Below are positions 19,076 through 49,100 of a DNA stretch of 64,000 bases, one piece after another. Each line of letters opens with the position of its first letter. The stretch's first letter is position 1. This DNA is from Cyanophora paradoxa CCMP329 (Eukaryota > Plantae > Glaucophyta): positions 97,720-161,719 of the forward strand of contig QPMI01000141.1 of the NCBI GenBank assembly GCA_004431415.1, written 5' to 3'. The translations under genes and the position numbers were made by a program. Below the pieces are notes generated by a model that did not search any database, was not told the origin of the DNA, and was given only the letters and a program-made list of their open reading frames with translations.

Positions 19076-19670
19076 ATGGCGGCGACGATCCTGCCCCTCG
19101 GTGCGACGCCGCACCGCGCTGGAGGCCCTTCGCAAGCCTCCCTGATGGCGCCACCCGTTCCGCAGAGCTCATCGACAAGTGCATCGGGAGCAGGATATGG
19201 GTCCTTCTCAAGGGCGCGTCGCCCGCTTCGCGTGACCATTCAGCGTCCATCGCGCCCTCGGGGGCCTGACGCGTGCGGCAGGCGATAAGGAGCTCACGGG
19301 CATTCTGCGCGGCTTCGACGACTATGTCAATAGTGCGCCCCGGTCGCCTATGTGCTGCATCTTTAGCTGCTGATGCGGGCGTCCCGATTCGCCGCAGTCC
19401 TTTTGGCCGGCCCGCAACGCGAGCGCCCCGCCCCCATTCTCCTGCTGTACTTGACTCGCAGGCTCCTCCTCTTGGCGGCTCGCACATATGGTGATAGAAG
19501 ACGTGACCGAGTAGTGCGTGGAGCCCGCTGAGTGCCGGGGGGGCGCGGAGCTAACGCCGTCCGGCAGTGAGAACACGCCGGAGGGGCGGCGGCTCACGAA
19601 GCTGGAGCAGATTCTGCTCAACGGCAACAACGTCGCGATCCTCGTGCCCGGCGCCGAGCCCCCGGAGTAA
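19076..19670 (+). CDS. LSM5: Sm-like protein LSm5
   Basis: Spliced [83 protein letters not shown]. The intact YVNMV requires removing 19330-19485 (AT-AC). Confidence 0.96.
19330..19485 (+). other. U12-type AT-AC intron in LSM5 whose donor is split by a nested U2 intron (19333-19397)
   Basis: GTCA|ATA[GTGCGC...GCTGAT...CCGCAG]TCCTTTT...CTCGCAC|ATATG. Excising the bracketed 65 nt gives ATATCCTTTT. Confidence 0.88.
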
Positions 19671-20024
19671 CCCGCCGGCGCCCGCGCTCCTCGCGGTGCG
19701 CCGCGCCTAGCGCGGGGCGTTCGCCCGGCCCGCGGCGCGGCGCCCGCTCACGCTCCAGTTCCGCCCGCAGGCCCCGACCTAGTAGCTAGGTAGCTCATCA
19801 AGGATACTATGATAGGTGGCGCTCTTATATGGACCAGTGCTCCCGAGCTTAAGATGCTGCGCGCGCCGAGGGACGGGAAGCGCTAGCTCTCGAAGTCTAG
19901 GCCCGGCACCGGCGCAGGTGCATGCTGGGGCGGGTTGCGTGTACACGTACTTAAACAGGTAGATAAAGAAGAATGACTAGGGACCTCGCTCACGCAAGGC
20001 CGCAGGCGCACTAGGCTGGTCTAG

Positions 20025-23000
20025 CTAGGACGCGTAGGTGGGTATGCTCGCCGTGGAGGGGTTGTGCGAGGGCCCGGCACCCGGGGCGGCGGCGGCGCCC
20101 GTGGCGGCGCCGGTGGCCTGGCGTAGGAGAGATGGGTGGCGGGAGAAGAGGTTGCCGGAGCCCGGGCGGGGCGCCGACGAGGCGAAGGCCTTCTGCGCCT
20201 GCGCGTAGTCGCTGCTCGCGCTCGTCGGGCGCGACCCGCCCGCCCCCTTCGCCTCCGCCTGCAGCCTGCGAGGCGGCTCGGATCTCTCGAGGCGCAAATC
20301 TCTTAGCGTGGCTCGGGAGAGGGCGCGCTTCTCGATGAGTCGGTCCTTGGCCTCGATCGCGATGCGCGTCGCCTGCGCCTCCGCGTTCATCCGCCGCACC
20401 GTCTCCGCGTACCGCCGCTTCTCCTCCTCCAGGCCCCGGATGTACTGCGGGGGGTACGGGTTCGAAAGACGTGCGAATCGTTTTCCAGCGCGACTCACGT
20501 CGACGGTGGGGTTGGAGGCGAGGTCGTCGAGGACGCCCTGCCGGAGCTTCTGGAACTGGCTCTCCAGGCCGGCCTCGGGCCCGCCGGGCGACCCGGGCGC
20601 CGCGGGGGCCGTGTCGGGGCGGGGCCCCGCGGACTCGAGGCCGGCGCCGGGGCCGACGGGGGCGGTGCCCGGGCGGGAGAAGCCGGCGGAGAGGGAGCGT
20701 AAGGGGCCGCCGGAGGAGCCCGAGGCCGCCGTGCTCGGGCGCCCCCCCGCCCGCCCGCTGAACTTGTCCCCCGTCGGCCCCAGCGGCGCCGTCGCGGCCA
20801 CCGCGGCGCTGAAGGGCCGCGACACGGGCCGGCTCTGCGCCGCGGCGCGGGTCAGGGCCGGTCCGGGCCGGCTTCGAGAGAGGGGAGTCGGACCTGGGCG
20901 ACGAGGAGGTTGTTGCGCTCGCGCTGCTCCTCGACGAGGAGGAACTTGCGGATCTCCGACGCGTACGGGCACTTCTCGTAGTCGATCGGGCCCGGCCGGT
21001 CCCGCTTCGGGATGCGCGGCCGCGGGCCCATCGGCGACTGCTCCATCGGGTACTGCCTGCGGCGGAGCTTAGAGAAGACGGGGGAGCTTGATGGGACGGA
21101 AAGATGTACCCCCCGTCGAGGAGGAAGAGGAGCTTCTGGCAGTGGCGCGCGTACTTGTAGAGGTACTCGACCTGGCCGCGGAGGCTGCTGATCTCCTCCT
21201 TGGAGGAGGCCTTGAGCTCGGCGAGCTCGGAGGAGGTGCGCCGGAGCTCGCCCGTCCTGCCCTCCACCATGTTCTCCAGCGAGAGCTTCAGCGCCGAGAT
21301 CTCCGTGTCCTGGCCAAGCAAGGTGAGAGGGAGCAGCGCACGAGAAGCCAAGGCATATTCTCGCGGGAGGGGAGGGGGGACCTTGGCCTGCTTGACGGCG
21401 GCGAGGCGCTCGGCGTAGTCGCGCTCGAGGCGGTCCCGCGCGTTCGCCTCCAGCTGCGCGCCCGCCGGTCAGGGTCGGAGAGGGGTCCCCGGGCACTCGG
21501 CAGCCCCTCCTGTGGGACGCGTCGCACCTGGGCGGTCTCGCGGTTCTGGATGGAGGTGACGCGGAACTCCTCCGGCATCCGCCGCATCTGCTCCGTCAGG
21601 TCGCTGCCCCCGCCGCCCCGCCCCGTCAGAAGGAGGGGTGGGAAGGGGCCGCGGGGGAGGGAGGGCCTCCCCGCGGGCGCGCGCACCTGACGAGGCGCTG
21701 GTTGTTGGCGGTGAGCTCGGCGACGCTCGCGCTGTGCTGCGCCGCACGCTCCCGCGCCTCCAGCGCCGCCCGCGCCCGCATCTCATCCACCTCCTGCGTC
21801 AGCTCCCGCACCTGGAGGCGGCGTCAGGCGCGGGCGAGGCGGGGCGGGGGCGGAGGGGGGCGGGCCTTGTCGTTGAGGCGGCGCTCGGTGGTGGCGAAGC
21901 GGTCCGAGTCGGCGGCGTTCTTCTGCTGCGAGGCCGCCAGCTCCGCCTTCTTCTTCTCCACCCGCTGCGCCCGCGGCCGAGGGAGGTGAGCGAGCGCCCC
22001 GCCGGCGACGCCCGCCGGGCCGCTCCATTCTAAAGCTATCTAGAGACGGCGGACCTGGCGGAGCTCGGCGTTCTCCTGGCGGGCGCTCCGCAGGTACCCC
22101 TCCGTCGCCTCCAGCTGCGCCAGCAGCCGCGACTCATCGCCGGCGCCGGCGCCGCCGTGCGGGAGCGAGTGGGCCCGCCCCGTTGGGCCGCTGGAGCCCG
22201 GCCGGTGCGACCCCGCCTGCTGCTGCTGCGCCTGCTGCGCGCCCGGGGCCGCCGACGCAACCGACGAGCCGCCGGGCGGCTGCCACTTGTACGCGGCGCC
22301 GGAGGAGCCCGAGGCCGACGCAGCGGCGGCGGTGCCGAGGCCGGCGGCGGAGTAGGCGCCGGGGCGGCGGGGCGATCCGCATGGGCCCCGACTGCGGCTG
22401 CGGCGGGGCGCCCCAGGCCTGCTGCTCGGCGGGCCGCCCGGGGCCCGAGGGGCCCGACCCGTACTGCTGCTGCTGCGGCTGCGGCTGCTGCTGCGGCTGG
22501 GCCACGGAGGCGCCCGAGGCGCTGCTGCCGAGGGCGGAGGCGGAGGCGCTGGGCTGCACCTGCCCCGCCCGCGCGATCAGCGACGCGATGTGGTCCTCCT
22601 TGCGCTGCAGCTCCCGCCGCAGGTCCGCCACAAGCTGCCGCAGCTGCGCGTCCGACCGAGCGGGCGGGCGGGCGGGTGAGGCGAGGGGCGCGGGCGGGTG
22701 AGGCGAGGGGCGCGGGCGAGGCGGTCCGCTTCGAGCCGGGAAGGGAGGGCACCTGGGCGATCTCGTCGGTGAGGCGGGCGATGCGCTTCTCCTGCCCCGC
22801 CGCCCGCGCGTCCACGTAGTTCACCCGCGGCCGGTTCGTCACGTTCTGGCACCGGTTCGCGAACTGCGCGGGGGGGCGGGGGGCGCGCGCCCCGTCAGCC
22901 CCGCCGCCGCCGCCGCCTCGGCCCCGCCGGCTGCGGCGGGGCCCCACCTGGAGGGTGTTGAGGCACTCCTCGTAGTTGGCGACCGTCGGGTTCAGGCACG

Positions 23001-46116: not shown

Positions 46117-49100
46117 CTAAGCGGAGCTGTCGACGAGGACCACCTTGCGGTGCTCGTCGCTCTGCGGGGCGGGGCGAGCGTGAGAGGCCGCCCGGGGGGG
46201 AAGAGGGAGATGCAGGGGCGCACGGTGAGCAGCGAGGCCCAGTTGACGTCGGAGCCGGTGCGGCAGAGCTCGCCGGCCGCGGCGTCGCCGAGGGCGAGGC
46301 GCATGGCGGCCACGGCGGCGTCGGCGACCGCGGGGGCCTCGACGGCGGCGAAGAAGGAGACGGGGAGCGCGCTCCTGGCCATGCAGCGGCCCACGAACTC
46401 GCCGACGAGCGCCGGCGCGTGCGGCACGTCGATGCCGATGTCCTCCAGCGACCCGATCACGTGCTCCAGCCTGCACGGCGCCCCTTAGCCCCGAACGCTG
46501 AGCGGGGCGGGGCGGGGGCGGGGCGCGGGGCGCACGCGCGGGCGATGTGGGAGCCGTGGAGGAGCGCGCGGCCGTGGCCGGCGACCATGAGGCGGGCGAG
46601 GAGGTCCCGCTCGCGGGCGCGGCGGTCGATGCCGACGAGGACGGCCCGGTGCACGACCTCGACCCGCCCGTCGTCGTCCAGGCGCAGCTCGCCCAGGCTC
46701 TCCAGCGTGTCCGCCAGCTCCTCGCTGCACAGGAACTCGTCCAGCAGGTCCCGGATCGACTCCGCCGCCGGCCGCTTCGACGCCGAGGCCGCCGAGGGGG
46801 CGTGGCTCGGGAGCTCGAGGATGAGGGGCGGCGGGCTGCCGGCGCGGCTGCTGCCCGAGCGGACCTCGAGGCAGGCGCCGACGGCGGTGACGCCCGAGGA
46901 GGATTCGGTGGGCGCGAGGGTCGAGGACGAGGGCGACAGGGGCGGGGTGGACGAGGCGGCCGAGCCCTGCCCGTCCGAGAGCGACGAGCCCGAGCCGCGC
47001 CGCTCGCTCTCCTCCAGCGCCCCGAAACGGTTCGCCGCCTGCGCCTTGCCCCCGTTGCCCGCCTGCTGCTGCTGCTGCTGCGGCTTGCCGGCCTTGCCCG
47101 CCGGCTTCTCCTGCGCCGCCGCCGCCGGCTGCTGCCGGCCGGCCGGCTGCTTCACCTGCGGCGTCTTCTTGATGTTCGAGGTCGGCTGGCCGATCGCGGC
47201 GCTGAAGCTCTGCAGCCGGCCCGACGCCGTCTTGGTGCTCGACGGCGGCGAGGGCGCCGGCGAGGCCGCCGGGGCCGCGCCCTTCTTCGCCGACGCGCCG
47301 CGGCCGCCCTTCTTGGCCGACACCGTCGTGAAGCCGTCGTCCGACTTGGGCGTCACCGGCGTCGTCGCCACCTGCAGCGAGCGCGCGCGCCCGTGCGCCG
47401 CGGCGCCGGTCGGGGTCGCCAGCGGCGAGGCCGGGGCCCGGGAGCTCGAGGGGGTCGCCAGCGGGGTCGACGCGGCGCGGTCGAGGCGGGCCGAGAGGGG
47501 CCGCCGCGGGGACTTGGTGTCGATGGCGAGGCCGGCGGCCTTGCGCTTCTCCTCGCGCTGCGCCTGCGGCGACGGCCTCGGACAACGCGCGGGCGCGCGG
47601 GCGAGCGGGAGGAGAGCATTGGGAGGGCGGACCTCGGCGTGGATCTCGTCGAGGGTCTTGGGGCCCGAGGCCTCGTGGCGGGGCACCCAGCCGTGGGCGC
47701 GTAGCTCCACGACGTCCTGCAGGAGGAAGCGGATGCGCGAGGAGAGGCGCTCGCAGGTGCCCCGACTGTGCGCCTCGATGTCCGCGAAGAGCTTGTCCAT
47801 GAAGCGCCGGCACCGGATGTTGTCCAGCAGCTTCCCCGTCGTCTGCGGCGGGCAAGAAGCGATCAGATTCGATCCGCCGTCTCAAAGGGCGGAGGCGAAG
47901 GGGGGCGGACCTGGAGGAGCTTGCAGAGGGCCTCGAGGTTCTCCTCGTCGGGGGTGTCCGCCTCGCCCAGGAGGCGCGTGTTGCAGTCCAGCACGATCAT
48001 CTCCGGCAGCAGCTTCACCTTGTACAGCTCCCCGATGAACTTGATATGTGCGAGGCGGTCGAGGAGAGCAGCGCGGGCAGAGGCGGGCGTCGCGACTCGA
48101 AAAGGCGGGAAAGAAGGAGAAGGGGGGGAGAGAGAACGCTCAGACATCCAAGGAAGATTGGGCCCGCAGCGGCCCAGCCCCCGGCAAGGGGCGGGCCCTC
48201 GGGTGGACAACTGCGAATGTGTTGAGAGACGGAAATCTCGTTGTTTCGATCATGGCGTTCCGAAAGGGGAAGAAAGGAAACGGAAAAGGAGGGGAAAGGG
48301 GGCGAATGCGGAACTCGCGGTCGAAAGGATATTGCCAAGCATAGCCTTCTTCATGAGCATCATGCGGTACTCGCGCTCCTCCTTGGGGAGGTCCTCGAGC
48401 CCCTCGGACGAGGGCTGCTTCTCGAACTCCTGCTGGCACTTGTTGAGCAGCAGCCGGCGGAAGTTCTGCGGTGCCGGACGGAGCGTGAGACCGGTGAACG
48501 AGGTCGGGCGGGCGGGGCGGGGGCGCCTCGGTGTGGCCGTCGAGGGAGTACTCGGGGAGCTTCTCGCAGAGGCGGACGCAGAGCTGGGCGTAGACGGCGC
48601 TGAACGCAGGCTCCGTCACGGCCTTGTCGAAGATCAGGCCGATCGTCCCCCGCAGCAGGTTCAGCGACGAGATGCGCCCGTCCATCAGCTGCCCCAGCAG
48701 CGCCTCGAACTTCTCCAGCGTCAGCTTGTTCAATATACTGCGCGCGCGCCGCGGCGTCGGCGTCGGCGGCGGGCACGGGATGGAAGAGGCGCAGGACTGG
48801 AGAGGGCGGACCCCTTGATGCTCTTGAGGACCTTCTCCTCCTCGCTGGCGTCTGTGTTGCGGATCCAGCGGTTCTCAGTCTGTACAAGGGGCGCGACCTG
48901 CGGTGCGACAGGGGGGCCGTCCGTGAGCGGGCGGGCGCCTCGCGAGCGGTCGGCGGAGGGGGCGGCGCACGTCCGCAAGGGGCGCCGGCTCCGCACATCC
49001 TGAGCGCCATTCGCGATCGTTGTCTGACTTCTTCCGGTTGTAGTTGTTGTAGGAGCTGCAGATCGCGATCACGTCGGGGGCGGGGCGCGGCCGGGAGGTG

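What the first reader, a model, noticed from the sequence alone, without database searches (positions are those of the whole stretch)
19330..19485. U2 intron nested inside the 5' splice site of a U12 (AT-AC) intron in LSM5: a two-spliceosome sequential 'stwintron'
Seen: the Sm1 motif ([10 protein letters not shown]) is restored only by deleting 19330-19485, which starts AT and ends AC. Its start reads ATAGTGCG, not a U12 donor. However, 19333-19397 is a typical 65-nt U2 intron for this genome (GTGCGC...GCTGAT...CCGCAG), and removing it fuses ATA+TCCTTTT into ATATCCTTTT, the U12 consensus. That donor is also used by the eIF4G AT-AC intron here, and both introns end in CTCGCAC. Known: stwintrons (an intron splitting another intron's splice signal) are described mainly as U2-in-U2 in fungi, and U2/U12 twintrons such as Drosophila prospero are alternative rather than sequential. 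LSm2-8 serves both U6 and U6atac. Inference: the major spliceosome must act first to build the minor donor, on a gene whose product both spliceosomes need, which could allow feedback control. I recall LSM5 carrying a conserved minor intron in other eukaryotes, but this needs checking.
Basis: partly seen in the sequence, partly recalled or inferred. Interest (0 to 1): 0.93.

Follow-up and report, generated by a model that had tools for sequence, protein, structure and literature searches.

The report
Major intron inside minor intron's donor
In an algal LSM5 gene, an ordinary intron sits inside the start signal of a rare "minor" intron, so the cell most likely has to use its two different splicing machines one after the other to make a single exon joint, an arrangement I found no report of; the finished joint is seen in RNA, the half-way product is not yet.

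Summary
The anatomy is real. RNA contigs from two studies join 19329 to 19486 and restore LSM5. The removed 156 nt end AT..AC but lack a minor (U12) donor. Cutting out a typical 65-nt GT-AG intron (19333-19397) rebuilds ATATCCTTTT; a rebuilt ATATCCTT arose in 0.01-0.13% of shuffles. The same position and phase holds an intact U12 intron in a sponge, a limpet and two fungi. Best reading (0.85): a major intron arose between bases 3 and 4 of an ancient minor donor, forcing major-then-minor splicing. Not shown: the intermediate (contigs held no unspliced form of any LSM5 intron, so its absence says nothing) and the second step's machine. One oddity: the best U12 branch site lies 31 nt from the AC, not 11-16. 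Feedback control is untested. Published stwintrons are fungal U2-in-U2; published U2/U12 twintrons are either-or. The genome is probably Cyanophora paradoxa (scan notes; consistent with PMC6704402). The scan noted this same stretch in another window and a U2-in-U2 candidate elsewhere in this genome; I saw no U2-in-U12 case on other DNA.

The parts
19076..19100 (+). LSM5 exon 1, coding part (ATG at 19076)
   Evidence: joint in RNA contigs
19101..19165 (+). LSM5 intron 1, U2 GT-AG, 65 nt
   Evidence: RNA joint; signals
19166..19213 (+). LSM5 exon 2
19214..19281 (+). LSM5 intron 2, U2 GC-AG, 68 nt
   Evidence: RNA joint; register
19282..19329 (+). LSM5 exon 3, ends in ...FDDYV + first base of N codon (phase 1)
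19330..19485 (+). Complex intervening sequence, 156 nt, removed from mature mRNA
   Evidence: RNA joint 19329/19486 in X2, X3, X6
19330..19332 (+). Bases 1-3 (ATA) of the split U12 donor
   Evidence: sequence
19333..19397 (+). Inner U2 intron, 65 nt, GTGCGC..CTGAT..CGCAG (predicted; excision not observed)
19370..19374 (+). Branch motif CTGAT of inner intron, A 24 nt from the acceptor
19398..19404 (+). Bases 4-10 (TCCTTTT) of the split U12 donor
19448..19455 (+). Best U12 branch-site match TACTTGAC, A at 19454, 31 nt from the AC (atypically far)
19457..19461 (+). Competing U2-type acceptor CGCAG; use with donor 19333 would give an in-frame 9-residue insertion; not seen in RNA contigs
19469..19476 (+). 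Branch-like CTCTTGGC at the usual U12 distance but with G in place of A
19479..19485 (+). Outer acceptor CTCGCAC (AC end)
19486..19513 (+). LSM5 exon 4, 28 nt (same length in sponge, limpet, Gigaspora)
19514..19567 (+). LSM5 intron 4, U2 GT-AG, 54 nt
   Evidence: RNA joint
19568..19695 (+). LSM5 exon 5 (stop at 19668-19670)
19696..19770 (+). 3' UTR intron, GT-AG, 75 nt, 25 nt behind the stop
   Evidence: RNA joint in X1, X3
48048..48332 (-). Comparator: uninterrupted AT-AC U12 intron of eIF4G, 285 nt, donor ATATCCTTTC, branch-like TCCTCGAC 11 nt from AC
   Evidence: not tested on RNA

Best explanation
A donor-split nested intron across two spliceosomes. Step 1 (inferred): the major spliceosome removes the 65-nt GT-AG intron 19333-19397 and joins ATA to TCCTTTT. 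Step 2 (inferred): the minor spliceosome recognises the new ATATCCTTTT donor and removes a 91-nt AT-AC intron, joining 19329 to 19486 (result shown in RNA). Origin (inferred): the outer intron is an ancient U12 intron; the inner one was gained later between donor bases 3 and 4 and was tolerated because short introns are cut out by intron definition. Most likely a neutral accident that is now obligatory, since every partial form breaks the protein.
For: Mature joint in RNA, two studies. Inner intron fits local U2 introns: 65 nt against 53-75; its first nine bases equal those of the RNA-supported intron 18020-17961; CTGA branch 24 nt from a CGCAG acceptor against 12-20 in the neighbours that show a clear branch motif. 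Rebuilt donor equals the eIF4G U12 donor over 9 bases; chance 1.3e-4 to 1.3e-3. Same position and phase is a U12 intron (GTATCCT donor, TTCCTTAAC-like branch) in Corticium, Lottia, Gigaspora and Rhizophagus. 275 fetched LSM5 proteins all have exactly three residues between N and E/D-D. The species has minor introns (77; PMC10639083). U11-48K reads donor bases 1-3 and U11 RNA pairs behind them (PMC3584512), so the split donor cannot be read as it stands.
Against: The intermediate joint 19332/19398 was not seen, though no unspliced form of any LSM5 intron was in those contigs. The outer branch site is 31 nt from the AC against an optimum of 11-13 (PMC3584512) and 11-16 in orthologues. Only U11 was found among minor snRNAs in Cyanophora (PMC10639083). 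Orthologous introns examined are GT-AG subtype, not AT-AC. No close relative was available to show the uninterrupted state.
Confidence: 0.85

Rival explanations
1. One-step major splicing in the shifted register: donor GT at 19333, non-canonical acceptor ...CACATA at 19488. It gives the same mRNA because ATA is repeated. The split U12 donor would be a relic.
For: Register is equivalent; 19333 is a strong local U2 donor; the outer U12 branch is atypical; fungal stwintrons are sometimes cut in one step from inner donor to outer acceptor (PMC12403724).
Against: Needs a TA acceptor while skipping good YAG sites at 19366, 19397 and 19461; every RNA-supported neighbour ends in AG; does not explain a perfect ten-base U12 donor and an intact inner branch and acceptor.
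Confidence: 0.06
2. Two steps as proposed, but the second is done by a changed or hybrid machine (for example U11 with major U2/U6 parts), not a standard minor spliceosome.
For: Only U11 was detected in this species and the authors suggest transformed machinery (PMC10639083); both AT-AC introns here end in a CGCAC that mirrors the local CGCAG; the branch TACTTGAC also fits the local U2 motif, at a U2-like distance.
Against: The eIF4G intron keeps a U12-like branch at 11 nt; failure to find diverged snRNAs in a very GC-rich genome is weak evidence.
Confidence: 0.05
3. One-step minor splicing in which the inner 65 nt loop out and bring ATA next to TCCTTTT without being cut, or a degenerate donor ATAGTGCG is used directly.
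For: No intermediate seen; the TCCTTTT pairing element is intact in the primary transcript.
Against: Inner segment folds no better than shuffles (z 0.19); it carries full U2 signals that a loop would not need; U12 donors are highly constrained (PMC3584512).
Confidence: 0.03
4. Chance: the rebuilt donor is a coincidence in an otherwise odd intron.
For: Large scans examine many introns.
Against: Shuffle probability 1.3e-4 to 1.3e-3 at a site independently known as a U12 position.
Confidence: 0.01

Closest known systems
[D]-class spliceosomal twin introns (stwintrons) of ascomycete fungi, e.g. [D1,2] in lipS and [D2,3] in bioDA (PMC5639578, PMC6616335, PMC12403724)
   Same: Inner intron interrupts the donor of an outer intron; inner must go first; arose at the site of an older host intron; a one-step mis-splicing route is possible.
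   Different: Those are defined as two nested U2 introns in fungi. Here the outer intron is U12-type AT-AC, the split is after base 3 ([D3,4]), the host is an alga, and the intermediate has not been shown.
U2/U12 twintrons: Drosophila prospero, SRSF10, NCBP2, HNRNPLL and 18 human cases (PMC8329584, PMC3564746)
   Same: A U2 intron lies within a U12 intron and both spliceosomes act on one stretch.
   Different: There both sets of sites are intact and compete, giving alternative mRNAs. Here the U12 donor does not exist until the U2 intron is removed, and one mRNA results.
Conserved LSM5 minor intron (V-N codon, phase 1)
   Same: Same position, phase and following 28-nt exon in sponge, limpet and glomeromycete fungi.
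   Different: Those are uninterrupted GT-AG U12 introns with a branch 11-16 nt from the acceptor; Saprolegnia has a U2-like intron there; Camelina, Citrus, Closterium, Diacronema and Folsomia have none.
Recursive splicing (own knowledge)
   Same: A first splicing step creates the donor for the next.
   Different: Recursive sites rebuild a U2 donor from AG|GT using the exon end; here the donor is rebuilt from two intron pieces and is of the other class.

Membership tests
Stwintron, [D] class | Inner intron interrupts the donor of an outer intron | tested here: met
   Removal of 19333-19397 joins ATA to TCCTTTT; boundary is unambiguous
Stwintron, [D] class | Inner intron has full canonical signals | tested here: met
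   GTGCGC donor, CTGAT branch, CGCAG acceptor, 65 nt, like RNA-supported neighbours
Stwintron, [D] class | Whole segment is absent from mature mRNA | tested here: met
   Joint 19329/19486 in three runs, two studies
Stwintron, [D] class | Splicing intermediate lacking only the inner intron is detectable | tested here: inconclusive
   Not among listed joints; contigs covered exons only, for all LSM5 introns
Stwintron, [D] class | Both constituent introns are U2-type (published definition) | tested here: not met
   Outer intron is AT-AC with a U12 donor; definition in PMC6616335 and PMC12403724. It works like a stwintron but is not a member as defined.
U12-type intron (outer, rebuilt) | RTATCCTT donor | tested here: met
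   ATATCCTTTT after step 1; absent from the primary transcript
U12-type intron (outer, rebuilt) | TCCTTAAC-like branch about 11-13 nt from the acceptor | tested here: inconclusive
   7 of 9 match but 31 nt away; at the usual distance the motif has G for A
U12-type intron (outer, rebuilt) | AT-AC or GT-AG ends | tested here: met
   AT..AC is one of four equivalent registers and the only one with known ends
U12-type intron (outer, rebuilt) | Orthologous position held by U12 introns | tested here: met
   Corticium, Lottia, Gigaspora, Rhizophagus
U12-type intron (outer, rebuilt) | Excision depends on U11/U12/U4atac/U6atac | not testable with these tools
   Needs bench work; no snRNA gene in the window; literature finds only U11 in Cyanophora
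U2/U12 twintron (prospero type) | Both introns have intact sites in the primary transcript and compete | tested here: not met
   No U12 donor at 19330 in the DNA
U2/U12 twintron (prospero type) | Two alternative mature mRNAs | tested here: inconclusive
   Only one joint seen; the in-frame 19333-19461 form was not, but contigs drop rare forms

The most novel reading that the evidence does not exclude
An obligatory relay between the two spliceosomes: the major spliceosome builds the substrate of the minor one within a single intron. The stronger form adds regulation: the stalled intermediate has a premature stop about 125 nt before the 3' UTR exon joint while the normal stop is only 25 nt before it, so LSM5 output could report the activity of both machines. 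The relay is likely (about 0.85); the regulatory use is unsupported (about 0.1).
Probability: 0.85. Interest if true: 0.85.

Novelty: new variant of a known kind. Interest (0 to 1): 0.8.

Why it matters
It would be a natural case in which one exon joint needs both spliceosomes in a fixed order. Known cross-talk between them is competition or exon-bridging help, not one making the other's splice site. It is a 156-nt, well-expressed substrate in a cultured alga, testable by one RT-PCR, and a ready tool for how a transcript is handed from one machine to the other and how fast minor splicing is. For evolution, it shows an ancient minor intron surviving an insertion into its most constrained signal, extends stwintron-like structures beyond fungi, and points to a class of minor introns that donor-motif classifiers cannot see. 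The odd branch site also gives a handle on the diverged minor machinery proposed for this alga.

Tried and rejected
Single GT-AG or GC-AG introns and two-intron micro-exon models: none restores V-N-M-V-I-E-D. In-frame 19333-19461 form: adds nine residues in the Sm1 motif, absent from 275 homologues and from RNA contigs. A second nested U2 intron ending at 19461: would leave about 35 nt with no branch A; rejected on sequence. snoRNA or other RNA in the LSM5 intron: none. Special folding: z-scores -0.6 to 0.8. Copies of the inner intron elsewhere in the window: none beyond short chance matches. Window-wide scan for other split RTATCCTT donors: two trivial edge hits (split after base 1 or 7), no second convincing case. 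First shuffle test was looser (any GT/GC..AG, third base fixed) and was replaced. Homologue search with the unspliced stretch 19515-19667 found nothing; exon 5 was too short for the search for related loci; the metagenome scan returned mostly intron-free loci. No glaucophyte orthologue was found. Independent naming of the organism failed. Two papers were not held.

Full report
Setting. The window is a GC-rich eukaryotic sequence (61-82% GC) with short introns. Scan notes on the same genome name Cyanophora paradoxa (AI notes, unchecked). This fits the published genome: 712 contigs, 67.6% GC, 9.2 introns per gene, mean 86 bp (PMC6704402). I could not confirm the name by a tool of my own (run names are coded).

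The gene. Exon 5 matches LSm5 in solved structures at E 7e-12. Exons 19076-19100, 19166-19213, 19282-19329, 19486-19513 and 19568-19670 translate to an 83-residue LSM5. RNA contigs from runs X2, X3 and X6 (two studies) show all four coding joints, including 19329/19486, at contig depth 110-118. X1 and X3 show a further intron in the 3' UTR (19696-19770). The runs are only guessed to be RNA, but exon-only cover with precise joints shows that they are.

The observation. The removed 156 nt start ATAGTGCG and end CTCGCAC. Because ATA lies on both sides of the cut, four registers give the same mRNA; only 19330-19485 (AT..AC) has known intron ends, and 19333-19488 reads GT..TA. No single GT-AG or GC-AG intron and no micro-exon model restores the Sm1 motif. 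Among fetched homologues, all 275 with a readable motif have exactly three residues at this spot, which argues against the in-frame 19333-19461 form with nine extra residues; that form was not in the contigs either.

The inner intron. 19333-19397 is 65 nt. Ten RNA-supported U2 introns nearby are 53-75 nt, mostly start GTGCG or GCGCG and end GCAG; four have a clear CTRA branch 12-20 nt from the end. The inner intron starts GTGCGCCCC, the same nine bases as intron 18020-17961, has CTGAT 24 nt from the end and ends CGCCGCAG. Its removal gives a 91-nt intron starting ATATCCTTTT, equal over nine bases to the donor of the uninterrupted AT-AC intron in eIF4G (gene identity; not tested on RNA). In shuffles of the 156 nt, a GT..YAG removal rebuilt ATATCCTT in 26 of 200,000 (ends kept) or 263 of 200,000 (first nine bases kept). 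The split falls between donor bases 3 and 4. In the human minor spliceosome the 48K protein reads bases 1-3 and U11 RNA pairs only behind them (PMC3584512), so the two halves of recognition are 65 nt apart in the primary transcript.

Comparison across species. I fetched eleven LSM5 loci from ten genera. At the identical codon and phase, the sponge Corticium, the limpet Lottia and the fungi Gigaspora and Rhizophagus carry U12 introns of the GT-AG subtype, with GTATCCT donors and TTCCTTAAC-like branches 11-16 nt from the end. Saprolegnia has a 49-nt U2-like intron there; Camelina, Citrus, Closterium, Diacronema and Folsomia have none. No glaucophyte relative was available, so the uninterrupted ancestor in this lineage is inferred. 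C. paradoxa has 77 reported minor introns, with only U11 found among minor snRNAs (PMC10639083).

What is not shown. The intermediate joint 19332/19398 is not among the listed joints (nine weaker ones were not displayed), and bin depths over 19251-19504 equal exon-only cover. The same holds for the ordinary LSM5 introns, so these contigs hold no pre-mRNA of this gene and cannot test the intermediate. In X1 the laid contig starts exactly at 19486, as an assembly fork would cause; this is a hint only. The weak point of the model is the outer branch site: the best match, TACTTGAC, has its A 31 nt from the AC, against 11 in eIF4G and an optimum of 11-13 (PMC3584512). Between them lies a CGCAG 7 nt after the A, then 24 nt with no A before the final AC. 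At the usual distance stands CTCTTGGC, a branch-like motif with G for A. Either a distant branch, an unusual branch base or a diverged machine must serve. No special fold explains it.

Mechanism. Shown: the mature joint, the sequence signals, the conserved U12 position. Inferred: major spliceosome first (65-nt lariat), minor spliceosome second (91-nt lariat), 0.85. Rivals: one-step GT..TA cut (0.06), second step by a hybrid machine (0.05), loop-out or degenerate donor (0.03), chance (0.01). Partial forms break the protein: full retention stops at 54 residues, the intermediate shifts frame and stops at 80. That stop lies about 125 nt before the 3' UTR joint, while the normal stop lies 25 nt before it; under the usual 50-nt rule (own knowledge, untested in this alga) only the intermediate would be degraded. 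This makes regulation possible but is no evidence for it. That the minor and major tri-snRNPs share many proteins is published (PMC5855946); that LSm2-8 binds U6atac I take from own knowledge. A neutral gain in an intron-rich genome is the simpler origin, as argued for fungal stwintrons that arose in older host introns (PMC5639578); a scan note reports a U2-in-U2 [D1,2] candidate elsewhere in this genome (unchecked).

Known systems. Stwintrons are defined as nested U2 introns and described in ascomycetes. U2/U12 twintrons such as prospero and SRSF10 are competing, alternative events. Searches for a sequential U2-then-U12 case found none, in a library that lacks most subscription papers. The element works like a [D3,4] stwintron but fails the U2-in-U2 criterion and the twintron criterion of intact competing sites. 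I rate it a new variant of a known kind.

Noticed in passing
window 48136-48258, minus strand: U14/SNORD14-like box C/D snoRNA (52.3 bits, E 3e-10, below the gathering score of 64) inside the AT-AC intron of eIF4G.
   Followed up: partly
window 19696-19770: RNA-supported intron in the LSM5 3' UTR, 25 nt behind the stop; it would mark upstream premature stops but not the normal one.
   Followed up: partly
window 19448-19485: Outer intron branch site is 31 nt from the AC, followed by an unused CGCAG and an A-free run; a G-for-A branch-like motif sits at the usual distance.
   Followed up: partly
window 19214-19281 and 20266-20328: Two of ten RNA-supported U2 introns near LSM5 have GC donors (GCGCG).
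   Followed up: no
window 19486, run X1: The LSM5 contig of run X1 begins exactly at the outer acceptor, and exons 1-3 are missing from that run; may be an assembly fork or a filter effect.
   Followed up: no
L086 687-735 (Saprolegnia LSM5): The conserved minor-intron position holds a 49-nt intron with a U2-like donor GTACGT: a likely minor-to-major conversion.
   Followed up: no
L083, L084, L085, L088, L089, L091: The LSM5 minor intron is absent in two flowering plants, Closterium, Diacronema and Folsomia.
   Followed up: no
window 48333 and 19329: Both AT-AC introns interrupt an Asn codon in the same context (A|AT...AC|ATAT), so their joints are ambiguous by 3-5 bases in RNA data.
   Followed up: no
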